The notes beneath the pieces are model-generated. The model was not told the DNA's origin, did not search any database, and saw nothing but the letters and a program-made list of their open reading frames with translations. Source: Trichoplax adhaerens (Eukaryota > Animalia > Placozoa). Taken from it: a stretch of 64,000 nt of DNA. Numbering within the stretch: position 1 is the first letter of the stretch; every line of letters starts with the position of its first letter. The DNA is taken from assembly GCF_000150275.1 (NCBI RefSeq), contig NW_002060948.1, positions 124,001-188,000 of the forward strand, written 5' to 3'. Of this stretch, positions 27,560 to 64,000 are shown piece by piece. Both the position numbers and the translations under genes were made by a program.

Positions 27560-28357
27560 GATGACGTCATCCGATGGAAATATGCAATTCTGCACGGCTG
27601 CTAGAATGAGTCATCATGCAAGCTCCATGCGCCAAGCCTGTAGTAATACGACGGAAACATCCTGTAGTGAAGTAGAGTATAGTATAAAAGCGAAGAATGG
27701 AATTTTTGGGTACTGCAAATCACCAGAAGTGAAGATTTGGTGTAGGAGTGATGTGACTAGTGCCATACGGTACGCAAACTCAGTCATGCACAGTACATTG
27801 TACAGTAGTATACAGTGTACACCCACTAGTAACCGGCATTGGAGTACTGTAGAGTACTGTACAGTGTACACTGTATAGTACTGTATAGAATTACAGTATT
27901 TTACTGAGAGAGAGTGTCCTGTAAGGTAGGTGCAACGCCCAGTTTAAAGTGTACAGTACTAGTAATCTCAATGGGTCCGTACCGGATCACTACTAGCAAT
28001 CTCAACAATGGGTCCGTACCGGATCACCAAGTTGATGTCAAGCGCTCAACTGTACGTACCCCACAGGATGATGAGTGTACTGTATATTGGCGTCATTCAT
28101 CACCGTCTGACCTAGTGCAAAACAACAAAACAACGGCTCACTCTCTTGGAGAGTGAAACTAGGGACATTTCATGCTCTGACATCAGCAATTCACAGAGTC
28201 GTTTCACAAGATGGCGAAAAGTATCTAAGAAAGGAAGCAAGACGTTGCCACCAACTGCTGTTCGAAAATAGGAGAAGCTTGGTAAAAGCCAACTGCTAAC
28301 ACGATAGAAATCGACTGAGCCAGGGAAATCCATTCAGGATCAATCTATTTTGCGCAA
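27560..28357 (+). promoter_or_regulatory. Putative KCTD3 promoter/5' region: GC-elevated, GTACAG/CTGTAC-rich island
   Basis: Perfect CRE palindrome TGACGTCA at 27562-27569; dense TACAGT/ACTGTA words at 27790-27960; duplicated 22-mer at 27969-27990 and 28006-28027; YY1-like AAGATGGCG at 28208-28216. Lies immediately upstream of the first coding exon. Confidence 0.65.
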
Positions 28358-31300
28358 ATGGAATCGGTTAGCTTTTCGCCTTATTCACTGTCAGTTGGAG
28401 ATACCATTATCAAGCTCAACGTTGGTGGTAAAAGGTGATGTAGGATATTGTAGGCATGAATATAGAAACTGCATGGGGTAGCTATCGATTGCCAGAAAGC
28501 GAGCTATTACCTTGGTTAACCTTGATCAGCAGTAACGGTGATCAAAACTGTTTAATCCATATAGTAGTTCGCGTGTGATGACATGCAGAGCTAGCTTGAG
28601 GACAATCCTAGACGCGTACTGGTAATTGACGAGTAGAATAGTGGAAGCATAATTTATCCCTTTACCAGTCAACAAGATCGCCTACAATCATCATCAAAAT
28701 TTTACTGTACATCGTTACCATTACTATTTCCAGTTAATCTTATTGGTAACATGATATTATAATGTCTATGTAATACAGCAGTATCTGTCAAGATAAACTT
28801 CATGCCATTGGTACTGTCGTTCTGCTTGGGTCAGACATTACAACTTGATCACTTGACTTGAAAACAAAACATTTTCCATGATACATTTAACGATCTTGAT
28901 GATATGATGGTATTATAGCTCAATACCCATTTCTCAAGGATGATGTAATAACACTAGAGGAGAAAGTTCTTTACAACCACCAAAAGACTCTTCTTACACG
29001 TAGTTTGATTTCAACATCGGCAATGTCATTATCATTCAATCCCTATACCTTTTCTCAATGTCAGTATTCTCTTTCTCTTATTTTATCCACAAGTCGCTGG
29101 TATACTGTACTAGAATAGAGTCAGTTCGCTGACTCGATCAAAAAGGTTATTGTTGCACACAGCTTCATGGAATATCCGTTTTCAATATCACTCATTGATA
29201 AAGCCTATACATCATCCCATGATTACGTCTATTTATAGTCCAGTCCTGGATTGACTAGATCAAATGGTTGTTATTGCATGTAGTTTTACCGATATACGCC
29301 TTGCAGTACCTATTTTTCACTGATAATTCTGGTATTCTCGTACATAAAGCAATAGGTACTTTACACTACGATTTGATTCACTAGATCAAAATTCTGTTAT
29401 TACACCTGGTTTAACTTCTACTGAATATGGGAAATATTAGATGATCGCCACAATGTCCGTCATGCTTACTAATTTATGACTAAACTGCCTTCTTTAAACT
29501 TGTACAATAATCACGTACATCAGTTAGCTAATGATACCCTACTAAAATAAGAGCATGATAGACGGGTATGAATTCATTTTTCGAATGATATTGCCGAGCA
29601 TACTCGTATTTCTCCTTCGTAAAACAGCTCGTCACATTAACCTGCAGCTTAAAAGTAGTTCTTGTTTACTCATGTTTTGACTTGCATATTGTTACTCAAT
29701 CATTTCATTATCTAAGATTTAGTGATTGCCTAGTAGCACAATTTGTAGTAAAAAAATGTTACATTCAACAAGAAACTAATCTACCTACTTCTTTGGTTCG
29801 TGTAGACTCATAGGTTAGGTAGTCCGTGATTAACCCTACCTACGTATGATGTCATGATTCGAGTAAATGGATTTACATATCAAAGCTATACGAAAGTACA
29901 ATATGGTAGTTTCATGGTCTTCTTTATCCTATTATATTTCGTTGCTAGATAATCTTCACATCCAAATACTGTTCGTATACTGTAGTTACTCGATAGTGAT
30001 TTTGTACGAGTATCACTACATGATACCAGTACAAATAAAGAAAGGATTATGGCTATCGAAAGCATTTGTCATAAAGTTCAATAACAATCTGATTGTTTAA
30101 CGTGATCTTTTTATAATGTTGTGAATATTCTGTATTCATAAAAATCATCAGTGGATTGAAAAATTACGTAATTGAATTTAAGAATTATGACTCTACGTCC
30201 TATAGTGCTGAACATTAGCAATTAATCACTGCTATTATATCATTGATTGTATAGATTTCAGACCTCCAAGCAAACTCTAACGTGGATTCCGAATACTTTC
30301 TTTACATGGTTAGCAGGCTATGTAATTATGTACTCGTCTATATTAAATTAAGGATTCTTTCTATATACATTTATAATTATGATTGGATTTGGTTATGGCA
30401 ATGATATAGATGAGCATAGTAATAGCCAGTATAGATAGCATTATTACAAATTATGATTTGGCTAACGTCATATCTTACTGTTCGATGGACTTTATTTCAT
30501 GTAGTATACCAGCTACAGAATTGTTATTATAATTGTAACACAATCCGTTATGGCAAAATGCTTCTTTTGGAAGTAATATTGAGTTTTGGCTATGATTGAA
30601 ATTGCAATTTCTCAGTAGTTTCTTGAATAAATTTTACGTACATCATAGCCTTCGGAAAGATGATATTCATTTTATGACGTTACTATCAATATCGGCTGGT
30701 ATCTTAATATTTCCAGCAAAGTCGTTCTGTAAGATACAGTTACAATCACTTTCCAAGAGTGTAATAACCACCTAATCCTAAATGTTGTCTTTACATAATA
30801 AAAAAAGTTTGCTGGATGGTAGAATACCAACGCTGAAAGATGAAAATGGCGACGTAAGTTTAGTACTATAAATCTATCTAAGTAAATACATATGCCTATG
30901 CTATTTTGAGATCCAATGCAACATTGATCGCGCTATTTATGATCAGATATTTATCGACCGTGATCCCGATGCATTTATACCAATATTAAATTATTTGAGG
31001 ACGAAGGAAATTGATTTACGGTAAGGTATAAGAAAACCAGTAAAAGGAAATACTTATTTTTTAAAGCACTGAGTGTGTAATATACACGAATATGTAAAAC
31101 TTATTATGGATATCTTGGAAGACTTTCTAATATCCCCATTTATGTTTGATAGTAATATTGGTCTATCAACGGTAAAACATGAGGCGGAATTTTACGGCAT
31201 CACGCCTTTAGGTAAGCCACATAACTGCTCTAATGATCTCATTCTAATGACAACAGATGAATATGACTGCCACGCATAATAGCAATGAATTTTACAGTAT

Positions 31301-34300
31301 TTTCAATTTTATTCATGATATTTTCATAGTGAGACAATTAACCTTGTGCGAAAACAAGTCCGACTCCGGTTGTGGAAGTTTGCATTTCAGCGCCTACTTG
31401 TCTTCACCAAGTAAAGCTTTTCCTTTGTAGCTAAAATAGATTGCATTGATTGATATTAAAAATAGTTGTCGTTCTCTGATAATTATTATTCTATTTTTGG
31501 CTGTTCACGATGTTTAATGGCTGTTTTTGTTATAATATATCTTTTAACATTTATAGCGCTCCCTATACCCAAATCTCATAAATTTAGTAAGCAACGTTAA
31601 AAATTTTAATTTTGATGATAAGATTACATATATGTTATTAGCCCGAGTTACTTACATACTGTCGTCCATTTCATATGTAGTTGAAAGTTAATGATATTTA
31701 CTAATCGAAAATACTGTCTATTGTGAATTGCGCACACGTTATTAATATAGATGATGCAAGTATGAAGCGTGTTTTATCAGTTACTGGACATTACAACTGG
31801 ATTGCAGTTTCATTTGCTCACTGTATTTGCTGTTATAAGTAAGTATTTATTCGGGCGGTACTTAAGTGAATGCTATAATTCTATAAATTGAGATCTTGTC
31901 GAAAACGATATTTATTAGATTGACAGAAACATCAGGCTGGCAGCTAGGTTTTACTAGTCCTTATCTAGCAAATTTTGCTGAGAAAATGGCATTAAACGTT
32001 CGAGTCATTGGTGGATCCCTCGGAGATAAGATGATTGCGGTGGCTTCAGGTTAGATGATGTGCATAGATATTTTTTATATACTGGTTATTGCGTATTATG
32101 ATGGTATTACATTATCACTTTAAGCAATTTTATAATACTAGTAATATGCAGCATAATGAAATTAAAACTCTGATACGTACGGTATTATTTCATGTCCGTA
32201 TAGGAAGCCAAATTCGTTTATGGAGCTTTGGTTCTATTCCTGTAACTCAAATAGGTATGGTGCATATTACCCCTTCGCATGAGTACTGCTGTCTGTTGTA
32301 TGCTATGCCAAAGCTCCTGATTCATTAGTTATTATTCATTTATAATTAGGAACTTTTGAGCTATATGTTAGCGTGGATGCATTGTTTTTCGTTGGTAGCC
32401 ATCTTGTTGCAATAAGTCATACAGGGAAGATTGGTGTTTGGCATTCTACAAATCAACACTGGCAGGTATCATCTTGAGCTACTAACAACTCCAGTAGTTA
32501 TTTTAGTAACGAAAGGTTGTTCATTTCAGAAACAAGATCTAATGCCTATAACTAGTTGGGATGCTGCAGCTGAATTTCTTTTGCTGGGTTGCAGAAACGG
32601 TTGTATTTATTATATAGGTATGATAATCCTACTTACAGCATTTCTAAGAATATCTTAATTCCTTAGTTGTAAATATATTTTAATGGGTATGTAATATTTA
32701 AATATACTTAATATTTACTTTTAAATACTTTGTGTATGACACTTCCGTAGATACTCAAAAATTTCCATTAAGAATGAAAGACAACGATCTTCTCGTTACC
32801 CAATTATATAAGGATCCTGAGAACCATGCGGTCACATCTTTAAGTGTTTACTTGACACCTAAAGGCAGTATGTTACATTAATGATATTTATGACAGTATG
32901 AAGTCATTGGCGTTGATTTATTCTTAGACATCTTTATAACTTATATCATTAATTATAGATTTTGGAGGTGGTGGTAGCGGTAACTGGATTGAAATTGCTT
33001 ACGGTACGAGTTCCGGAATTGTTCGAGTTATTGTACAGCATCCTGAAACTGTTGGGCAAGGACCACAACTGTTGCAGACATTTACTGTTCATCGGAATGC
33101 TATTACTAATGTTATGTTAAGTGAAAAAAATTTAATATCCGGTAAACGATCAATACATTAGTAACAATCATCCTTTGCTACTAATCTTCTAGTAATGCTA
33201 TGTAATATAACCTTGACTGATTACTTTCATTTATTGTAGTATGCACCGAGAAACATGTTCGCACATGGACTGTAACTCGATTTCGTGGAATGATTTCTAC
33301 TCAACCCGGATCAGTGCCGTTAGCGTCATACCGTGTCCTAACTTTATCGAATGTTCAAGAACCATTCTATGGTTTGGAGGCAGGAAATCAAATTGGTAAA
33401 GAAATTAATATGATATAATAGGATTTGCAATGGTGAAATATTTACTGTCTGTAGTGGACTAATATTCTTCTTAGTAATACTATTAAAATTAATATCAAAG
33501 GTCCATATGGTCATCGTGACGGCGAGCAAATCTTTATTCAAAAAGTTATACCGGAAATAAATTATCTTTACGTTCGATTGGCTTCTACAGGGAAAAGGTA
33601 AAGTTAATAATAATCGTACAGATTTAACTTCGATAACAATGTGAATTGTTCTGTATCCTAGAATTCTTGTTGCATTGAGAGTTAAAAATATTTGTATTGT
33701 TAAAAATAGGGTTTGTAAAATACGCTCCGTAGATGGTTCAAATATCACATGCCACAGTGTACATGAATGCGAGGGAGTTGGTAGACTGAGTTCAAGGCTT
33801 CGAAAGTTCTTTTTTACTGGCCATGAAAATGGAAGTATTCAGGTTATTCTCACCAATGTTGCAAGTAGTTTTAAGCTAAATTACAGTATTTCTTGACTCT
33901 ATAATCAACTCTTAATAGGTTTGGGATTTATCGACTGCACTTGATGATGCACAAAAGTTCTCTGAAAGTAAGCTTTTGAAGATTCTTGTCAAAATTATTT
34001 ATGCATATCACTTAACGTATTTCTTTATTTAGCAAACGAAGCATCTGGTGATGGTGGTCCAAGTGAAAGTGAGTTACAAAAAATCTTGGAACAGTGCGAT
34101 CTTGCAAGTCAGTCAGCACAATCAACTCCTATTTATGGTTCACTTGTCAGTCTCACAAATATCGCCTCTTCACCTGTACCTCGTCGGCTCAATTATAACC
34201 GTACTATATCTACAAGTCGTATTTCATTGACAACAGGTGATGCTAGAAGCAGTTGGCATCGTGTTCCTGACAACAACAAAAGACATGAACCTGTAGAGAA

Positions 34301-34349
34301 TGAGGAGATTAGAGTTGGCTCTCCTAAAGCAGTAATTTCTGATTGTTGA
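28358..34349 (+). CDS. KCTD3: BTB/POZ + WD40 protein of the KCTD3/SHKBP1 family
   Basis: Spliced peptides [150 protein letters not shown]. These match KCTD3/SHKBP1 as I recall them. The start could alternatively be ATG 28211. Confidence 0.93.
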
Positions 34350-54920: not shown

Positions 54921-57461
54921 CGTGTATTATGAATTTATCGTACGCGCAGATAAATATTATAAATTATTTTTATTATCTTAATTACTTCTTGGTATTGGAA
55001 ATTATTGATAACATAGACAGAAAGTAACGTACCTTAATTACTGGTGCAACAAACTACGTATACTTCGCTCATATTAATAGTTATAAAATTGAATTGCATA
55101 TTCACTAAATATATTTTTTTAAACATTAGTCTTTAACAGCTCAAATTATGCTTTTATAATCTGTTAAGTAACGAAAATACATATCGCTTTCTTTCTTAAT
55201 ATTAATGGTTAATGACTGAATTTTCTTCTAGACAATGTATGAAACTAAAGTTATCTCGTCGAATCATTGATCCGAGACATGTGTATAGTTTTAGTGGCCA
55301 TACTTGTATTAAATCTAGTTTCATTTGGTGTATTCAAGTTCTTAATGCCTTTAAAATGCATAAATTAATTCTTTTAGAATGATATAGATTGCTTATCATT
55401 TACTTTATAAACTATTCAAAATAAGTTTTCATGATATTTAGATGCAAAAAAAACATGTTAAGACGGCAAATGATACTAGAATCACAGACTATTGAAGATT
55501 AATAAACATGTTCTATAGCTGAATATGACCGCTTCGGGAATTTTAACTATTAACAGTTTAATAAAGGTACCACCAATTCATCCTATTTATTATAGATTAC
55601 TTTAATTGTTACCATAGAAACTGTTTAAAGAAAAATTACTATAATATCTAATTAGGCGTATTAAAAGGAGATATAAATGAAACCAGAATTATGAGATTTC
55701 CTTATATTTGTGACGGAGTGTATGCATAGGGGGGTTTCAGTAAGATTATAAATACGCATGATCCGTTAAAACAGCCTTAATCTTACCCTATCAAGCAGGA
55801 TACAGAATACTTTGATTTATAATACAACAATTTTAGTATTATAAAATGATTTTTGTGTTATCAAGATCGATAAAGGCCATATTAAATGACAGAAATTGAA
55901 GCTTAATTAATCCCATTCATTAAAATACCAAAAGACTTATTTTGTATGAGTTTACAGCCAGCTCTCGAAACTCTATCCTAATCAATTAATCCAATCCTTG
56001 ATCGTTTTAAAAAATACAGTAATCATAAATTATTCATGAAAATCACAAGGATTACGCTAGTTATGATATAACTAAGCACATTAACTTCAACCAGAAAGAC
56101 AATAAGCTATCTCAAGTTTACTTTACTATTGTGATTAACAGTATTATTGTCAAGATTACTCAATCAGCCTTATGCTTAAGCTAAGAAAACAGTCATTTTA
56201 CTCATTATCATGCTAATATAACTATGATCTATTCTACCACCTACGGTCTCTATTCTGAACAGAAATGATGACGCCTTCGCTATTCTAAAAATATTCTTCA
56301 AACTGATCGATTCACAACCATGACCTTTATTTTCTTCATATGCTAAGCAATAGGACATCTGTTGATTCAGTAAAGGAGCGGTTACTAACTTTTTGTCCTG
56401 TCTGGGCTGAGTAACCAAGTCACCTTACAGAGATAATAATTGATTTCAGTTAATTAGTCTCAAAATTATTTAATATCTTATAAAACTTCACAAGAGCAAG
56501 TGTAACTGATATATCATTTATATCTTAAAAAGTTTCTAGGTAATTTTCAATTGATAACGTCATTTATATTTCACGTACAGAGTTTTTCTTCGGGAAATAT
56601 CGCTACATTCGCTAGTACTTCATTGGATTGCTATAACTCGATTTCAATTAGTTTAACTACTGTCAGTGATCTGCGTTCATTATTCATTATTTAGTACTTT
56701 ACTCCTAGGATTTTAACGATTTTCCTATATTTTTCTCTGTTATTTAATCAATCATTGCGATTATTTTCGATTTAGTATCTATTGAAAGATTTATAAATTC
56801 TAAAACTGACCACCAAGACGAAAAATATCAAGAACGATAGAAACTTGCTTTTAAAAAGTAAATTGATTATTTGCCTCTCGTTAAACATCGAAATAAAATT
56901 AAAGATTATTGCGAAGGACACTGATCGCTATCAAGATTCAAACAACTTTAGTAGAATGCTCCAGTAGTAAAAACTGCTTTGGAAATGTCGCCGGTATGAT
57001 TTCATTTAATTTTGTAAGTTTAGCTTGTTACATATAAACTCATCTTATAGAAAATTTCTTAAACTTGATTAAAACTGTCCTTAATTATAAATAATTCCTT
57101 ATTTTTGTTCAAAATTATACTACTATTAAAATTAGGATTTATCGCTATTTATGTGATTGGAGAAGGCAGTAACACGATGCTAAGATATCTAATAGTGATT
57201 GGCCTGTAATTCTTTTCGAGACACTTACATTTATTATTGACTGATAGTTATCAATCATGTTGAGAACATTAAAGGTATCTCGATCAATCCGAATTCTCTC
57301 CATTCTCACGGTCCTAATAATTTTAAATCAGGCAAGAAATAATCAACTAATGTACAAACCAGAGGCAGTTTTATTGCGATTTCATAAAGACTATTCAGAT
57401 ATTTCTTCAATACTATATATTCAAATCGACTAAATTCAAATCCACTCTCTTTCTGCTTAAT

Positions 57462-60400
57462 ATGATTACGTTTACCATATTTTTCTTTCAGATCTATTTT
57501 ATAAGAATTAGTAGTGTAGAAGCAAACGATATTAATTATGCCCAAGGCACATATGTAATATCAACTTCGACCTGCGGTAGTCCTCCAACTGAGTTTTGTT
57601 CCCCGGATGGTCAATGTTCCAATATTTGTAACGAAACATGTCCACAAACTTCGAAATTAACATTATTAACAACGGCAGCCACGGCGGCTTCGGCGGTAAG
57701 GAATAATGAAAATCTCTTTACTTAGCATTAAAAAATTAAGTAATATAAAGGAAGTCTATAAGTTATCATTTTACGAGTATTCGTCCCATGATCGATTTTA
57801 AAAGATACTTTTACCTGTACTACTCGTGCAGGTACCAACATCGTCTTCTGCTCCTGGTAGCTATACATCATCTTATAATTTTGACGGATCAACATATTAT
57901 ACAGTACAACAAAAAGATGAGCCGACAACATTGCAAGTTCAAGGTGGCTTCTCTATAACGATTTGGACCAAACCACAGACAAGTAGTGTTGGGTAAGTTG
58001 AAGTAGATGATACACTTACTTCTCTAATAATACGGGTAGTAAAGTCTAGTATACCAATCCTCTAGTATCTAATTATTGATGACAAACATTCGAATTTAAA
58101 GGTAAAAGACTTTCTTAGAAAAATTAATATACTGTACGGTAGTAATAGCGATAAGATCTCCTAGACTATAAGAATCAAAGGGGTTTCTGCAACTACGTTA
58201 GCCGAAACTAAATCTCTTAAGAATACGCTACAATAGCTCTAATCATTATTTTAAATACAATTTCATCATATCTCAATTGATAATGAGTTTAAATCCGTCA
58301 TAATCCATAAATTTAATTATCATGGCTTGTATGCGATATTATGATGTTTATAGTCATAATACTGCGAAATTCAAGTTTATGTCGCTAACACCATGATTCT
58401 CCTAATTATACTGTATACTCACGCTATTTTGCAATAAAGATAGTGTAGCTAATATTGATTATTCCATTTGCTTTTCGATAGACGATTTTTTATGAAAGAA
58501 GCTCAAGGCACTTCCAATGGTATTTACATGTCGTTAGTTACCAATACAACTGGTCCTAATAAACATTTATCCTATTGGTATCAAGACGACAACAATCAAC
58601 TCAGTTCCGTTACTTTTTCTAATATTGCCCTCGATGATAACTTGTGGCATCTAGTAACAATTATTATATATAATGAAGGCGGATTTGATATTTTTACCCA
58701 GCAGTATTCTAAACCGTCGATATCGCTTTATATTGATAAGACGCTGAGATATGCTAATTCTCGCTATGGGGGCAAGCCGAAATATGGATTGGGAACTTTT
58801 ACTATCGGTAAAGGCGTCCAAACTGGCGATAATTATAAAGGTATCAATATACTTATAGATTAGTAGTTCGTGGTTGATTATCAGAGCGTGGACGGTCTTG
58901 TTCCATTATCAATAAAATATGAAATTTATGCTACCAGTTAAAAGCGGTGAAAACTACAGCTTTTATTCGTTTTTGTATCCAGTTATCGAAGTTCTATATT
59001 CAGTGATTCAATCTTAATTATTTAAAAATATTTTGGGTTATATATGGCGTCAGACTTTTAGGATCAATTCAGTAATTAAAATCAACATTATAGTATTTAG
59101 GGCCTAATATTCCACAACGCCTAAGTTTTAGTAGTTTGTAGCCAGTTTTAAATTCAAAGATGCTCAGCTTTGTGCTATAATTTAACAGATAGATAAAGAA
59201 ATGATGCCATAACATAACTAGATTGATGTTACTTATTGTGTCATATTTTAATACAGTAGATAAATTTCAGAGTTAAATTTTAATAATTTGCGGCAACGTT
59301 ATTTAAATAATATTACCGGCTATGATTAGAGAGGATATTGAAGACATTCTGCGAAAATTAAGTATTCACTACAGTATGTAAAATAAATTAATCAAAATAG
59401 CAGTTATCAGTTAAACACGATCTTACGAGAATAAATTCGATTACTTCGTGATTGAAATGAAGATAGCTTCGCGGTATATTCTAGATTATGCGTAGCAGTG
59501 AACTTTCTAATACATATTTTTATGAATGAATTGCAAAAAGTAGTTAAAAAATACTTCAGTAATAATCAACTAATTTTTAAAAGTTACATTTTAAAGTACA
59601 TCAATTTATTAAGCCGATAGCAATTTTACTAATGTCATTCATATTGTTTACATATATAACGTCAATCCAGAACTCTATTCTTACTATAGCTACTGCAACT
59701 CGTACTATAACAAATAATCAAGACTGATAGAATCTAATGATAATATATTAGTCTTATAAGTGCTCCGAAATTTCATTCTCATAATTGCTACAGCAAATCC
59801 AAATTTGTTGTAATAAGTAATTAAGATTAATAACACAGATTTGAGGATATAGGTTCTATAAAAACAGTTAGAAATGAATTCATAATGGTTATATAGTTAA
59901 ACAATATCAGAAGCTTCAATTGTCATTGTAATATCTAATTAGATCTTTATACTTTGTTACTTACGATAAATTGTCAAAATAAGTATACATTCTATCTTGT
60001 TTACTAGGTCTTATGGCTTCTCTACAGTTTTATGACATCCAGCTACAATCGAATCAAATTAACAATTTAGCTAGTGGTTTATCTTCCATTTATGCATCCA
60101 AAGTATATCCATATCCTCGATGTTTGTGTAAAGCTAACTCTCAATTAGTACCAGACGCGTACATTATTTCCAGATGCCTGAACGCAAGCACTGGAAATTA
60201 TTTCGATAGGTAATAAATTGTAACTAATACTATCTACTATCGTAACGCAAATATACCAGCTATACGAATAAATCATTTTGTTTAAAATAAAATCAGTTTA
60301 ACTAGTTTTGCTAAGAGACTATAATCTAAGTGCTCTGGCAACTGGATCACCGTAACATAAGATTGAAGATCGAATCCATATCAACTTAACAGTTACAGAC

Positions 60401-63400
60401 GAATAATATTATATTCCAATACTCTAGATAGATATTATGGTATTACTACGTTTTATAAGCACTACCGATATATCTTTAAATAAAGATATTAAAATTCTTA
60501 GTATTTTCTATCTAATTCACTTGTAACACGTTAGCGCACGTTTTCCCCATCTGTAGAGCACATAACTGCTATAAATATAGTTGGCAACTGCAATTGTTTG
60601 ATTTATTCCACTTTCCGTACGCTCAGTCAGTCATAAAATTTACGCTCAGCATTTAAATTAATTTAATCCCTTAGAATTAATCCCGATTCGCATCCAGCTG
60701 CTTATGCTAATGATGGCAATTTGAATACATTTTGGCTTGCCGCTAATGGGACATCAAGTGCAAATCTTACTCTAAACTTATTCAATACTACAACTATAAC
60801 CTCTTTAACTATTCATTCCGTCTACCTACCAACAACCGTAGTCGTTGAGAAACTTTCAGCATCAACTGGCCAATGGCAAATTCTACAACTCTTTGCCGAT
60901 AATTGCCAATTACGATATTCACAAGGAAATAATTCAAAGTTTGTAAACCTTTTAAATTTGCTTGATTTTAAGTATAAATCCATGCAATGGTCTGCCTAAA
61001 TCCGTTTTATCACTATTTACATACAGATTAGAAACAATCAATTCAATAAATTGCATAGAATTCGATGAAATGAATAAGCAGACAGCCAATTTCACCTTTT
61101 GGGTATTAAATCATGAATAGTAAATGAAAGCGTAAAACCTGATTTGTATCGTACATTGAAATTAAACTTATTCTCTATCCCAATTAGGCAGCAGAAGGAA
61201 GACCATTTACCAACGATGTTCAGTCCATCGCTCAATTGACTAATTTTAGATCTTCGAATAGCACTCGTTTTCAATTTCAATATTCCAATAATCAATCTCA
61301 GACGTACTTTGGTATTAAAGAAGTCATCGTCAATAGTGGCAATAGCTACGATCCTATTTTCGTTAATAGTACGTTGTATTACCAAATTGAAGAAAATTTG
61401 CCAAACAATACTTTGATTGGGAAAATTATGGCCTATGATCCCGATCATGCTAAAGTTTATTTCACCGCAGTAAAGAATGATCCAACGGATACAACATTCG
61501 GTTATTTTAACATTGATACCAATGATGGCAACATAACTACCATAAATAATATCGATTATGAAACAATTCCCTCTAATCCTTACATTTTCAACGTTACTGC
61601 TCATGATTATGGGATAGATAATAGTCGTACTCAAACAAAGCAATTAATTATCACTATTGCCAATGTACCAGAGACACCACAATTTGTCAATATTAATGGA
61701 ACTCCAACTCAAGGATATCAGTTTGAGGTTAATAAAAAAGTTTCTGAAGGAAGCGCAATTGCAGCAGTGCATGCAGTTGATCCAGATGGCTCTGGCACAG
61801 GTAATTTAATCATAACTAAGTTCTAGCAACTTTGCAACTTTACTATGAATGATGCCAATTTTATTGCTACGCTTACATAGACATAAAACTAATTACTTAC
61901 CTACTCATTACTATTATGCTTCTATATTATCATTTTACACCTTAATTACTCCGAGAGTAGCGTGTAAATTTAGTTCTTTTTATTCCGCCACTTGTGCTTA
62001 TACACTTTCATTAATAGCAATATGCCATTATGATAGGCAAATGTTACTAGGAAAAGTTAATTTCGGAACAATGATCTAGATTATCTTATTTTTCATAGTG
62101 GTAAATTCCTATGCTTCCATTTAAGAGTTACAGAAGGATTACATATTAACATATATAGTATATATATCGTTCATATATTTGCAAATTTCACTAGCTATAT
62201 TTAGAACAATGATCTAGGCTATAGTAATTCCATAGTAGTAAATTTTTACGCTTCCACTTTAAGAGTAACAGAAGGATTACTTGTTAACATACACATTGTA
62301 CAAGTAAGCATGCATGCAAACTACACTAGCTATATCTAAGGTAATGATCTAGGCTATATTATTTCACATAATAAACTCTTACACATACATATAAAGAATT
62401 ACGAAACGGTTACATGTTGGAATTTAAATAATTATACGCGAACTTCACTAGCTATATTTTGGGCTATGATCTAGGCTATGCTGTTTTACATAGTAAATTC
62501 TTACACATCCATGTTAAGAGTTTCAGAACAATTTCATATAAATAGTATACACTGTTTACCGTACTCATCTAATTTTACCTTGCAATTATAATTACTTATT
62601 CTTACAATACTGTGTATATCAGTTACTACAGATATGAACGTTACTATTATCAAGGAGCTAATATTTAAAATCCCCTATTTAAAATATATATATGCGATTA
62701 TTGTGAGATATTCTTGGCATTTATGATTATAAAATTTTATTACATTAATTCTATGTTAATGCTTTCGCTCTTATAATCACAAGGTTGTTGGAGTGTTGTG
62801 AGTTATTCTTTCGTTAATGAACTTCAAGTCTTCCCTTTTTCCATCAATTCTACTACTGGTAGTATTACTACTACCATGCCATTATCAAGTATATCCAACA
62901 CATTCTATCAAGTCAATGCTACCGCTCAAGATTGTACAAATTTAACAGATATTGCCTTAGTGAACATTTCTATTGTCAATACCAATGATTATCCACCTGT
63001 TTTTAATTCCAGTCTCTATCGGCAACTCGTTACAAATACTCTTCCCATAGGATCATCTGTTATACAAGTCATGGCTACAGATAAAGACTTAAATCAGTTT
63101 GGAAAAGTATCTTATTCTATCTTGAATCAGACTAATTTATTTGCTATTCACTCAGCCACTGGTATAATATCCACGGCATCGAGCTTACGATTGATCGTTG
63201 AAAATATCACTCTTACTATTTTAGCACAAGATGGTGGAAGTCCACCCTTCAATACAACTGCTTTAGTCGATCTGGATATATATAATCCATGTCAAGATGT
63301 TTCTTTGTGGATTTTGCCGCCTTATAATACAACATTAGATCCATCTGTTAGTTCTGTTGGTTCGTTAGTAATAGCCATTAACGGCTCTGTTCAAGATCCA

Positions 63401-64000
63401 AGACAAAATCAGGCGGTAGACGAGATTATTATGTTCTATCAGATAATGGCTGGTAATAATGATGGTCTTTTTGAGATCAACGGGCAAACCGGTATCGTTC
63501 GATTGGCTAAAGATTTACAGCAATCTGATTTTGGTAAAACTAGAACTTTAACTATCTCGCTTTCCAATAATGGCAGTTGTTCTGTACCTATTACTACGAG
63601 CGATGTTAGTATTAATATTAATTATGAGATTACTACGTCCAAAAACTTTGCTTCATCAGTTCAGCTAGCATTTTCATCGCCTGAAACATCAATCTTGGAC
63701 TCCACAGTTAGCAGTGTGAAACATTCTTCCTTCAACATTCTATCCCCAGAATTATCCCTTCAATTTACTCCCACTTCCATTTCATTCGATATTGCTCTTG
63801 CATCATCGACTACACTTCAAGAATTACTTTCTTCAACACCAATTTTTTACTCCTCAGGCAATAGCATGATATATTCTTCCGATGATAGCTTATTATCAGA
63901 AACATCTTTTCAAGTTAGTTCTACATCGATAGCATCTTCCACACTCGAAATAGAAGCAATACCTTCAAGTCAAAAAATATCTTCGCTGCCATTAGCAAGC
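57462..64000 (+). CDS. Secreted/cell-surface protein: usherin-type LamG-like domain + laminin N-terminal domain + 4 cadherin repeats + Ser/Thr-rich region; 3' end beyond the window
   Basis: Signal-like MITFTIFFFQIYFIRISSVEA (an upstream ATG exon at 57257-57274 is an alternative). Exons -57695, 57832-57992, 58482-58840, 60008-60209, 60674-60938, 61027-61102, 61188-61800, 62784-64000 (open). Motifs: STCGSPPTEFC; FSITIWTKP; LDDNLWHLV; RINPDSHPAAYANDGNLNTFW; WQILQLFADNC; cadherin motifs IEENLP..AYDPD, IDYE, AVDPD, NTNDYPPVF, ATDKD, AQDGGSP. Confidence 0.85.
62068..62537. repeat. Intronic tandem repeat, ~3.5 units of 120-137 bp
   Basis: ATGATCTAG(G/A)(C/T)TAT...TAAGAGT.ACAGAAGGATTAC...CACTAGCTATAT, with units starting near 62068, 62205, 62341 and 62462. 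Confidence 0.85.

What the first reader, a model, noticed from the sequence alone, without database searches (positions are those of the whole stretch)
57462..64000. Usherin-cadherin-mucin chimera: usherin N-terminus joined directly to cadherin repeats
Seen in sequence: the spliced protein has STCG...FC...C...CP, a LamG-like fold (FSITIWTKP, WHLV, ISLYID, YKGLMASLQFYDIQL), then RCLC...RINPDSHPAAYANDGNLNTFW...WQILQLFADNC...LETINSINCIEF...YFGIKEVIVNSG. From memory, this follows human usherin (USH2A) block by block (FVGRMQDFRLY, RLNPEAHPLSFVND, WQYFARNC, LEKPDSVNC, YYAVDEITISG). Usherin then continues into laminin-EGF and FN3 repeats. Here the protein goes straight into NSYDPIF...IEEN...AYDPD, four cadherin repeats and a mucin-like tract. 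LamNT plus cadherin is known in choanoflagellate/sponge lefftyrins, but there with EGF/furin modules. I know of no described family with usherin-type LamGL+LamNT+cadherin. Inference: a possibly novel adhesion or ciliary/microvillar link protein. It combines in one chain module types that vertebrate hair-bundle links place in separate proteins (usherin versus CDH23/PCDH15).
Basis: partly seen in the sequence, partly recalled or inferred. Interest (0 to 1): 0.9.

Follow-up and report, generated by a model that had tools for sequence, protein, structure and literature searches.

The report
Laminin-head cadherin on a serine-rich stalk
A placozoan (Trichoplax) gene, confirmed by RNA, makes one giant membrane protein with a usherin-type laminin head joined directly to four cadherin repeats and a very long serine-rich stalk; the same head sits on cadherins and mucin-like stalks in other early-branching marine organisms, so this is an unusual variant of an old design and not a one-off chimera.

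Summary
Assembled RNA contigs from three studies join every exon I predicted. They carry the laminin N-terminal (LN) domain and the cadherin repeats in one reading frame. The true start is an upstream exon (ATG 57257), not 57462.

The head is a split LN domain. Its first strand and Cys loop come first, then a LamG-like insert and a CxC…C linker, then the rest of LN. Usherin has this layout and laminins and netrins do not. LN runs into cadherin repeat 1 within about 10 residues, inside one exon, with no laminin-EGF.

Downstream lie four cadherin repeats and about 3,000 Cys-free Ser/Thr-rich residues in 122-aa and 71-aa repeats. A membrane-spanning segment follows.

The same head also occurs on unnamed marine eukaryote contigs. 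There it is joined to cadherin plus TMEM132/cohesin modules (sponge/choanoflagellate-type cadherins) or straight to giant Ser/Thr stalks. A 92-column tree cannot place the Trichoplax LN with usherin or against it.

Trichoplax has no canonical usherin. A KCTD3/SHKBP1-like gene lies 23 kb upstream, and KCTD3 abuts USH2A in mammals, so a remodelled usherin orthologue stays possible.

Verdict: real, and a new variant of a known kind. Earlier notes of this scan concern this same stretch only, not other DNA.

The parts
57257..57331 (+). First coding exon (E0): start codon and first 25 residues of the signal peptide. An in-frame TAG lies 12 nt upstream if the exon is continuous.
   Evidence: RNA contigs of X4, X5 and X11 carry ...CTCCATTCTCACGGTCCTAATAATTTTAAA directly before 57488. 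This matches window 57300-57331.
57332..57491 (+). Intron with a GC..AG boundary (GCAAGA donor).
   Evidence: The joint is inferred from loose ends because the laid stretch began at 57400.
57492..57695 (+). E1: end of the signal peptide, then the LN domain's first strand and Cys loop (YVISTSTCGSPPTEFCSPDGQCSNICNETCP).
   Evidence: Pfam Laminin_N positions 6-53, E 0.004. All 8 PDB hits are the N-termini of laminin gamma-1, netrin-G2 and netrin-1 LN domains. Joint 57695/57832 seen in RNA.
57832..57992 (+). E2: start of the LamG-like insert (…GGFSITIWTKPQTSSVG).
   Evidence: RNA joints on both sides. Identified only by motif collinearity with usherin and the L008, L009 and L016 exons. No Pfam hit.
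58482..58840 (+). E3: core of the LamG-like insert (NLWHLVTIIIY … ISLYIDK).
   Evidence: Pfam Laminin_G_3 positions 41-129 of 151, E 0.0017, below the cut-off. Custom HMM of the head's relatives, p 3.5e-4. hhalign and PDB searches were not significant. RNA joints.
60008..60209 (+). E4: last LamG-like strand (YKG|LMASLQFYDIQL) and the CxC…C linker (PRCLCKANSQLVPDAYIISRCLN).
   Evidence: Custom HMM p 1e-4, collinear after E3. The same linker is in Branchiostoma and Patella usherin, P0131, P0134, L016 and L017. RNA joints.
60675..60938 (+). E5: LN domain core (RINPDSHPAAYANDGNLNTFW … WQILQLFADNC).
   Evidence: Pfam Laminin_N 51-138, E 5.6e-10. Custom LN HMM 75 bits. 31-37% identity to usherin, sponge-type and choanoflagellate-type LN.
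61027..61102 (+). E6: LN domain middle piece (LETINSINCIEF).
   Evidence: Custom LN HMM positions 112-128, p 0.002. RNA joints.
61188..61340 (+). E7, first part: last LN strands (…QTYFGIKEVIVN).
   Evidence: Custom LN HMM positions 144-187, p 0.002, collinear after E5 and E6. BLAST to Patella usherin residues 246-294, E 0.004.
61341..61800 (+). E7, second part: about 10-residue junction (SGNSYDPIF), cadherin repeat 1 and the start of repeat 2, all in the same exon as the LN end. There is no cysteine and no laminin-EGF.
   Evidence: Pfam Cadherin at E7 residues 66-157, E 1.6e-15; Cadherin_FAT4_N from residue 60. One exon in RNA contigs.
62784..63652 (+). E8, first part: rest of cadherin repeat 2, then repeats 3 and 4. 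Calcium-binding motifs are partly eroded.
   Evidence: Pfam Cadherin, 3 stretches, E 1.5e-25. Joint 61800/62784 in phase in RNA. Motifs read directly from the sequence.
63653..64000 (+). E8, continued: start of the Cys-free Ser-rich repeat region. The open frame runs on to window-equivalent 70771 (contig C1409:194771).
   Evidence: Open frame of 2662 aa. About 17 units of roughly 122 aa. AlphaFold2 on one unit with 15 repeats as alignment: pLDDT 42, no secondary structure.

Best explanation
This is one real, expressed Trichoplax gene for a giant type-I membrane glycoprotein. I estimate 4,400-4,600 residues; the 3' exons were not checked against RNA.

Order of parts: signal peptide; a split laminin N-terminal (LN) domain with a LamG-like module and a CxC…C linker inserted after its first strand; four cadherin repeats that follow LN directly within one exon; about 3,000 residues of Cys-free, Ser/Thr-rich, probably disordered and O-glycosylated tandem repeats; a short all-beta region next to the membrane; one membrane-spanning segment; and a Ser-rich tail.

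The head is an old cassette. It is shared with usherin, with sponge/choanoflagellate-type LN-cadherins, and with LN-headed mucin-like proteins of other marine eukaryotes. The gene is most likely a placozoan member of this group of LamGL/LN-headed surface proteins, not a fresh usherin-cadherin chimera.

Inferred working: the stalk holds the LN and cadherin head several hundred nanometres above the membrane. There the head binds matrix, glycans or a partner on a neighbouring cilium, microvillus or cell. This would resemble usherin links or the mucin-like protocadherin CDHR5.

Shown here: gene structure, transcript continuity, domain order and relatives. Inferred: glycosylation, extension, binding and location.
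For: - RNA contigs from three studies join all exons in frame.
- Pfam finds LN in two pieces around a Laminin_G_3-like piece, then cadherin.
- E1 matches only LN N-termini in PDB.
- Custom HMMs place E5, E6 and E7 collinearly on LN, and E3 and E4 collinearly on LamG plus linker.
- Branchiostoma usherin has the same order: Laminin_G_3 at 137-283, then Laminin_N from 313, with the ATCG…C…C…CP start before it.
- L008-L010: LN(5-59) | Laminin_G_3 | LN(43-233) + cadherin | TMEM132, cohesin, 12 or more cadherins.
- L011, L016 and L017: the same head running into Ser/Thr stalks of more than 2,600 aa, then TMEM132 Ig domains.
- In the best tree the Trichoplax LN is sister to the LN-mucin group, support 79/75.
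- Stalk: S+T 33%, 0 Cys in 2,372 aa, pLDDT 42.
- Hydrophobic segment VAALAVLTTLEIAGIVCGILLLLVMAVCAVYVY, followed by RK, at window-equivalent 78.2 kb.
Against: - The LamG-like module is below Pfam's cut-off. hhalign and PDB searches did not support it.
- No whole-domain scoring or fold prediction was done, because exons were not joined.
- Tree support for any placement is weak.
- The relatives are unnamed contigs of unknown organisms.
- None of them has LN + 4 cadherins + stalk without a TMEM132 module, so the Trichoplax order is so far unique.
- The stalk is proline-poor and fairly hydrophobic for a mucin.
- FN3 near the membrane was not confirmed.
- Exons beyond 64000 have no RNA support here.
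- Nothing is known of location or ligands.
Confidence: 0.5

Rival explanations
1. Remodelled usherin orthologue. The gene is the placozoan USH2A counterpart. It kept the head, the membrane anchor and its chromosomal neighbour, but its laminin-EGF/FN3/LamG rod was replaced by cadherin repeats and a Ser-rich stalk.
For: - It is the only split-LN gene among four LN loci in the genome. The other three have an unbroken LN followed by laminin-EGF.
- Probing the genome with Patella and Branchiostoma usherin finds no canonical usherin, although usherin is reported from sponges and cnidarians (PMC4942974, PMC3002383).
- A KCTD3/SHKBP1-like gene lies at window 28.3-34.3 kb. Its best PDB hit is the SHKBP1 BTB domain, E 1.3e-6, against 0.007 for KCTD5.
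- KCTD3 abuts the 3' end of USH2A in man and lies next to it in mouse (PMC13704990, PMC4213026).
Against: - The bilaterian usherin clade (95/90) excludes the sequence in the 92-column tree. The union is not rejected (p 0.18).
- There is no laminin-EGF, no FN3 array and no LamG pair.
- Three genes lie between it and the KCTD3-like gene.
- The other USH2A neighbour, ESRRG, is not linked: no nuclear receptor lies on this contig.
- One linked pair found after the fact is weak evidence.
Confidence: 0.25
2. Lineage-specific exon shuffling. A usherin-type head was joined in the placozoan lineage to an unrelated cadherin-mucin gene. Resemblance to the sponge-type LN-cadherins would be convergent.
For: - No protein with the same full order was found in two searches of 5.8 billion proteins or in 1.84 billion cluster representatives.
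- The cadherin repeats resemble FAT- and CDH23-type repeats only generically, at 25-35%.
- Trichoplax lacks the Cys-rich linker that sits between LN and cadherin in L008 and L009.
Against: - LN running straight into cadherin, and LN running straight into a Ser/Thr stalk, both exist elsewhere with the same nested head.
- The LN end and cadherin repeat 1 share one exon. A recent junction of exons would more likely leave an intron at the join.
- Searches were length-limited, and placozoan relatives seem to be withheld from the databases, so the absence of a match is weak.
Confidence: 0.2
3. Artefact: two neighbouring genes merged by eye, a misassembly, or a pseudogene.
For: Nothing found.
Against: - Spliced contigs of 3.9-4.4 kb from independent runs cross every junction with an open frame.
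- There are no stops in the 2,662-aa exon 8.
- Runs labelled as a second organism show the same splicing with a few substitutions.
Confidence: 0.02

Closest known systems
Usherin (USH2A)
   Same: - Signal peptide.
- LN first strand and Cys loop, then a LamG-like (Laminin_G_3) module, then a CxC…C linker, then the rest of LN.
- LN core 25-31% identical.
- Single-pass membrane protein.
- Linkage to a KCTD3-family gene.
   Different: - No laminin-EGF repeats after LN.
- No FN3 arrays or LamG pair.
- Cadherin repeats and a Ser-rich stalk stand in their place.
- The C-terminal PDZ-binding motif could not be checked.
- Not placed inside the usherin clade.
Sponge/choanoflagellate-type LN-cadherins (lefftyrin/coherin class of Nichols et al. 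2012, as described in PMC6030884 and PMC12221298; here contigs L008-L010)
   Same: - Identical nested head.
- LN followed almost at once by a cadherin repeat.
- The intron after the 'W.K…G' strand and the intron after the LamG core fall at the same places.
   Different: - Those genes have a short Cys-rich linker, a TMEM132/cohesin module and 12 or more cadherins.
- Trichoplax has four cadherins, then a Ser-rich stalk.
- Trichoplax shows no TMEM132, EGF, furin or phosphatase modules.
- That L008-L010 are lefftyrins proper was not verified.
LN-headed mucin-like genes on unnamed marine eukaryote contigs (L011, L016, L017; proteins P0124-P0129, P0135, P0137, P0140)
   Same: - LamG-like plus CxC linker plus LN head.
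- Exon limits of the LN core match E5.
- LN is followed by a Ser/Thr-rich single exon of more than 2,600 aa.
- Nearest group in the tree, support 79/75.
   Different: - No cadherin repeats between LN and stalk.
- A Cys-rich linker after LN.
- TMEM132 Ig domains after the stalk.
- Organisms unknown.
Mucin-like protocadherin CDHR5 (MLPCDH) of the brush-border intermicrovillar link
   Same: From general knowledge and PMC4942974: four cadherin repeats, then a mucin-like tandem-repeat region, one membrane span and a tail. This is the same layout as the part of this protein that follows the LN head, and it suggests a link-forming role.
   Different: - CDHR5 has no LN/LamG head.
- The stalk here is roughly ten times longer and proline-poor.
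- No specific sequence similarity was seen; homology was not tested.
Laminin and netrin LN domains
   Same: The fold family of the LN pieces (Pfam PF00055; PDB hits to laminin beta-1, laminin gamma-1 and netrin-G2).
   Different: - LN is unbroken in laminins and netrins and is always followed by laminin-EGF. This includes Trichoplax's own three laminin-like genes.
- Similarity is only about 16 bits, against 50-55 bits to usherin-type LN.

Membership tests
Usherin | LamG-like module followed by an LN domain at the N-terminus | tested here: met
   Pfam per exon shows LN 6-53 | Laminin_G_3 (E 0.0017, sub-threshold) | LN 51-138. Custom HMMs are collinear. Branchiostoma usherin has the same order. 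The LamG part is only moderately supported.
Usherin | About ten laminin-type EGF repeats directly after LN | tested here: not met
   The last LN strand ends at E7 residue about 50, and the Pfam cadherin match begins at residue 60-66. The junction has no cysteine.
Usherin | Long FN3 arrays with a LamG pair | tested here: not met
   Exon 8 and the next open frame are Ser-rich repeats. The C-terminal pieces give only Fn3_Dep-1_3rd at E 0.027. The membrane-proximal model is all-beta at pLDDT 50, with no fold match. The usherin probe finds no FN3/LamG array at this locus.
Usherin | Single membrane span and a C-terminal PDZ-binding motif | tested here: inconclusive
   A hydrophobic segment followed by basic residues lies at window-equivalent 78.2 kb. 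The true C-terminus is not defined without RNA for the last exons.
Usherin | LN sequence groups with usherin in a tree | tested here: inconclusive
   In the 92-column tree the usherin clade (95/90) excludes it. Forcing the union is not rejected, AU p 0.18.
Cadherin superfamily | Tandem extracellular cadherin repeats above Pfam's cut-off on a membrane protein | tested here: met
   PF00028 scores 57.7 bits (E7) and 89.9 bits (E8), against a cut-off of 28.8. There are four repeats. DXD and AXDXG motifs are kept, while DXNDN is lost or partial (read).
Lefftyrin (LN-EGF-furin-FN3-tyrosine phosphatase cadherins) | LN domain together with cadherin repeats | tested here: met
Lefftyrin (LN-EGF-furin-FN3-tyrosine phosphatase cadherins) | EGF and furin-type Cys-rich modules, and a TMEM132 module (PMC6030884) | tested here: not met
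   There are 0 Cys in the 2,372 aa of exon 8's repeat part and 0 in the first 560 aa of the next open frame. Pfam finds no TMEM132, EGF or furin in the scanned pieces. The repeat region itself was not scanned with Pfam.
Lefftyrin (LN-EGF-furin-FN3-tyrosine phosphatase cadherins) | Cytoplasmic tyrosine phosphatase domain | tested here: not met
   The open frames after the membrane span (116 and 70 aa) have no Pfam hit. No open frame long enough for a phosphatase domain follows.
Mucin-like protocadherin (CDHR5) | Four cadherin repeats, then mucin tandem repeats, then a membrane span | tested here: met
   The layout is met. This is a resemblance in design only. Orthology was not tested, and the extra head is absent from CDHR5.

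The most novel reading that the evidence does not exclude
The gene is the placozoan orthologue of USH2A, still linked to KCTD3, whose laminin-EGF/FN3 rod was exchanged for cadherin repeats and a glycosylated stalk. Usherin, the LN-cadherins of sponges and choanoflagellates, and the LN-mucins would then be branches of one ancient family of LamGL/LN-headed surface links. In that case the usherin-plus-cadherin partnership of hair-bundle and microvillar links would trace back to proteins that carried both module types in one chain.
Probability: 0.2. Interest if true: 0.75.

Novelty: new variant of a known kind. Interest (0 to 1): 0.55.

Why it matters
Usherin and the Usher cadherins build the links of sensory hair bundles and photoreceptor cilia. 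Related cadherins link brush-border microvilli. How these link proteins arose is unclear.

This gene shows, with transcript evidence, that usherin's distinctive head can sit directly on cadherin repeats in an animal without nerves or sensory hair cells. The same head is used on cadherins and on mucin-like stalks in other early-branching lineages.

This gives a concrete set of sequences for testing whether usherin and the old LN-cadherins share an origin. It also gives a candidate for the surface links or coat of Trichoplax's ciliated, microvillus-bearing epithelium.

An LN domain that lacks the laminin-EGF repeat it normally packs against is a further, testable structural oddity.

Tried and rejected
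- **Joined protein.** InterPro-style whole-domain scoring, AlphaFold of the head and a whole-head phylogeny were therefore left out.
- I re-ran it by reference only.
- **The search for homologous proteins, first search.** Exon 8 cadherin part against 1,460-4,660-aa proteins gave only FAT, CDH23 and dachsous-type cadherins plus the window's own 2,647-aa frame.
- **The search for homologous proteins, second search.** The same part as a 1,000-aa query gave no spliced transcript protein and no orthologue. P0160 was checked and is unrelated.
- **The search for homologous proteins, third search.** The L016 TMEM132 region gave six unnamed ENA proteins, so the organisms of the relatives stay unknown.
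- **Discoidin lead.** P0004 and P0025 (F5/8-C plus cadherins) are true discoidin inserts, not LN heads.
- **ESM Atlas.** It gave only generic LN or cadherin clusters.
- **LamG tests.** hhalign of E3 against the LamG exons of relatives gave E 0.08. E3 against PDB gave nothing.
- **Tree of the LN core.** It was unresolved, and AU tests rejected nothing.
- **Membrane-proximal 119 aa.** AlphaFold gave pLDDT 50 and Foldseek gave no match at E 0.001 or better, so FN3 is not confirmed.
- **ESRRG linkage.** None of the four nuclear receptor genes is on this contig.
- **KCTD3-like exons.** Pfam and NCBIfam found nothing. Only the PDB search identified the family.
- **Papers not held.** Nichols 2012 and Hulpiau & van Roy 2011 were unavailable. 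The lefftyrin definition and any earlier description of this Trichoplax cadherin rest on secondary sources and memory.
Full report
**What the window is**

The window is G000:C1409:124001-188000 of a 105.6-Mb, 1,414-contig, AT-rich genome. Earlier notes of this scan call it Trichoplax. Size, base composition and intron structure fit that.

**Gene structure**

I read 57400-64000 and derived exons from reading frames and splice signals:
- E1: ?-57695
- E2: 57832-57992
- E3: 58482-58840
- E4: 60008-60209
- E5: 60675-60938
- E6: 61027-61102
- E7: 61188-61800
- E8: 62784 onward

I then laid four RNA-type runs from four studies on 57400-63300. Three runs (X4, X5, X11; two organism labels) contain spliced contigs with exactly these seven GT..AG joints. 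Single contigs of 4,433 and 3,867 nt run from E1/E2 into E8. The LN part and the cadherin part are therefore one transcript with one open frame.

These contigs carry at least 255 further letters upstream of 57488. Those letters match window 57300-57331. The first coding exon is thus 57257-57331, joined by a GC..AG intron to 57492. The N-terminus, MLRTLKVSRSIRILSILTVLIILNQ|IYFIRISSVEAN…, reads as a signal peptide.

**Domains, exon by exon**

No joined protein was used anywhere. Pfam gives:
- E1: Laminin_N positions 6-53 (E 0.004)
- E3: Laminin_G_3 positions 41-129 (E 0.0017, below the cut-off)
- E5: Laminin_N 51-138 (E 5.6e-10)
- E7: Cadherin (E 1.6e-15)
- E8: Cadherin, 3 stretches (E 1.5e-25)

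Against PDB, E1 hits only the extreme N-termini of the laminin gamma-1, netrin-G2 and netrin-1 LN domains. The LN domain is therefore split after its first strand and Cys loop, and a LamG-like module sits in the gap.

I built an HMM from seven LN domains of relatives. It places E5 at positions 21-106 (75 bits), E6 at 112-128 (p 0.002) and E7 residues 9-49 at 144-187 (p 0.002), all in order. LN is therefore complete and ends at '…YFGIKEVIVN'. The cadherin match starts 10-15 residues later in the same exon. There is no cysteine and no laminin-EGF between them.

A second HMM, built from the LamG-plus-linker region of Branchiostoma usherin and four contig exons, places E3 and then E4 in order (p 3.5e-4 and 1e-4). 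hhalign and PDB searches with E3 alone were not significant. The LamG-like identity is probable, not proven.

**Downstream of the window**

I fetched the rest of the gene from the contig. Exon 8 is an open frame of 2,662 aa.
- The first ~290 aa hold the rest of cadherin repeat 2 and repeats 3 and 4.
- The remaining 2,372 aa have S 24%, T 9%, P 3% and no Cys. They are organised as about 17 units of roughly 122 aa.
- AlphaFold2 on one unit, with 15 repeats as the alignment, gives pLDDT 42 and no secondary structure. This is consistent with a disordered, glycosylated stalk but does not prove it.
- After about 1.4 kb of broken repeat copies, a further open frame follows (72203-74443). Another note of this scan reads the broken copies as an intron; I did not test that. 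The frame holds 71-aa near-identical repeats and then an all-beta piece that I could not assign to FN3.
- A hydrophobic segment followed by basic residues lies at 78.2 kb, and Ser-rich tail frames follow.

**Relatives of the head**

HMMER with E5 against 1.84 billion cluster representatives gave only 22 hits. Among the ones I characterised there is no classical laminin or netrin. The named hits are usherin of Patella and usherin of Branchiostoma. A third cluster holds a Bicosta (choanoflagellate) protein with LN + laminin-EGF + GF_recep_IV/furin.

Branchiostoma usherin has Laminin_G_3 at 137-283 followed by Laminin_N from 313. Before these it carries '…ATCGLAGRSSHC…C…C…CP'. This is the same order as here, including the CxC…C linker.

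E5 scores 50-55 bits against these proteins but only about 16 bits against solved laminin and netrin LN domains.

**The head is not confined to usherin**

*Group 1.* Four unnamed proteins (P0131, P0134, P0143, P0144) come from large ENA contigs. On those contigs (L008-L010) the called genes and my Pfam scans show:
- LN positions 5-59
- a LamG start exon
- Laminin_G_3
- LN 43-233, followed in the same exon by a short Cys-rich linker and the start of a cadherin repeat
- the rest of that repeat
- a TMEM132 cohesin-like domain, TMEM132 Ig domains and Cohesin
- at least 12 cadherin repeats

PMC6030884 reports that the TMEM132 module sits inside the lefftyrin, coherin and hedgling cadherins of choanoflagellates and sponges. 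PMC12221298 appears to place the EGF/LamG modules of lefftyrins at the N-terminus. These contigs therefore look like that class. I could not verify furin or phosphatase modules, or the organisms.

*Group 2.* Seven exon-sized proteins (P0124-P0129, P0135, P0137, P0140) form a well-supported clade (97/97). On L011, L016 and L017 they show a LamG-like exon with the PQCLC linker, an LN core exon with the same limits as E5, and an LN end. That end runs, after a few cysteines, into a Ser/Thr-rich single exon of more than 2,600 aa, followed by TMEM132 Ig domains.

LN-to-cadherin and LN-to-stalk junctions therefore both exist elsewhere. Trichoplax combines them and lacks the TMEM132 module.

**Placement**

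I built a maximum-likelihood tree of the E5-equivalent region (17 rows, 92 columns; Trichoplax's own laminins as outgroup).
- It recovers the bilaterian usherin clade (95/90) and the LN-mucin clade (97/97).
- The Trichoplax sequence falls in neither clade. It is sister to the LN-mucin clade at 79/75.
- AU tests reject no alternative: with usherin p 0.18, with the sponge-type p 0.45, with laminins p 0.28.
- Rows left out: P0143, P0144 and P0145 (near-duplicates) and the third Trichoplax laminin-like gene, whose LN core is split over two exons.

**Is it Trichoplax's usherin?**

A Pfam Laminin_N scan finds only four LN loci in the genome. Three have an unbroken LN followed by laminin-EGF. Ours is the only split one. 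Probing with Patella and Branchiostoma usherin finds no canonical usherin. Papers report usherin in sponges and cnidarians, and homologues in choanoflagellates (PMC4942974, PMC3002383).

Following a lead from another note, I checked the gene at window 28.3-34.3 kb. Its BTB exon hits the SHKBP1 BTB domain best in PDB (E 1.3e-6, against 0.007 for KCTD5). It continues with propeller-like exons. It is therefore a KCTD3/SHKBP1-family gene.

KCTD3 lies directly beyond the 3' end of USH2A in man: a 324-kb deletion of USH2A exons 57-72 removes all of KCTD3 (PMC13704990). In mouse the genes are listed in the order Esrrg, Ush2a, Kctd3 (PMC4213026).

This linkage is suggestive but weak. Three genes lie in between, it was noticed after the fact, and the other neighbour, ESRRG, is not linked. 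I keep 'remodelled usherin orthologue' as a live rival at about 0.25.

**How it probably works (inference)**

- A signal peptide and a single membrane span put the head outside the cell.
- A Cys-free Ser/Thr stalk of about 3,000 residues, if O-glycosylated and extended as in mucins, would hold the head several hundred nanometres from the membrane.
- LN domains mediate protein-protein assembly in laminins and receptor binding in netrins.
- Four cadherin repeats followed by a mucin region and a membrane span is the layout of CDHR5, which forms intermicrovillar links (PMC4942974 for the role).
- The calcium-site motifs are partly kept (DXD and AXDXG present; DXNDN lost after repeat 1 and partial after repeats 2 and 3).

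I therefore expect an adhesive or link-forming head presented far from the membrane, on the ciliated and microvillar epithelium or in its surface coat.

**Verdict**

The exact order of domains is so far unmatched, so this is a new variant of a known kind. Interest is moderate to good for people who study the origin of cell-surface links.

Noticed in passing
window 28319-34349 (+): A multi-exon KCTD3/SHKBP1-family gene: a BTB domain whose best PDB hit is SHKBP1 (4CRH), then propeller-like exons ending …[12 protein letters not shown]|VWDLSTAL. It lies 23 kb upstream of the LN-cadherin gene. KCTD3 is the direct neighbour of USH2A in man and mouse.
   Followed up: partly
window 57332-57491: The first intron of the gene uses a GC donor (CAG|GCAAGA … TTTCAG|A) instead of GT. 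It is seen as identical loose ends in three RNA runs.
   Followed up: partly
window 62060-62620 (intron 7): About four head-to-tail copies of a ~120-bp element (…GATCTAGGCTAT…TTACACAT…). RNA contigs from all four runs match parts of it and then run on into unrelated sequence (loose ends at 62434, 62470, 62600). It is probably a dispersed repeat that is transcribed elsewhere.
   Followed up: no
L007:1856-8026 (window-equivalent 64556-70726) and window-equivalent 72203-73900: The stalk consists of about 17 units of ~122 aa, 38-95% identical to one another, with a nested 41-aa sub-repeat. The next open frame holds seven nearly identical 71-aa units. Some copies are 91-95% identical at the protein level, so the arrays have expanded recently.
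   Followed up: partly
L016 (ENA ERZ28747376 ctg1750), L011, L017: An undescribed-looking gene type in unnamed marine eukaryote contigs: LamG-like plus CxC linker plus LN head, then a Ser/Thr-rich exon of more than 2,600 aa, then TMEM132 Ig domains. Relatives found with its TMEM132 part carry dockerin (PF00404).
   Followed up: partly
L008 5169-6107 (-): In the sponge-type LN-cadherin gene, a rhodopsin-type receptor gene (7tm_1) sits on the opposite strand inside the intron between the LN start exon and the LamG exons.
   Followed up: no
P0141 (Branchiostoma usherin model) residues 332-414 and 490-572: The database model repeats the LN core and the preceding linker almost exactly. This is probably a gene-model or assembly duplication, not biology. 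I used only the first copy.
   Followed up: no
window 57400-63300, runs X4/X6 against X5/X11: Runs labelled with a second organism name show the same splice joints, with about 1% substitutions in the exons (for example 5 in 519 nt of exon 8). The gene and its splicing are therefore kept in a second placozoan strain or species.
   Followed up: no
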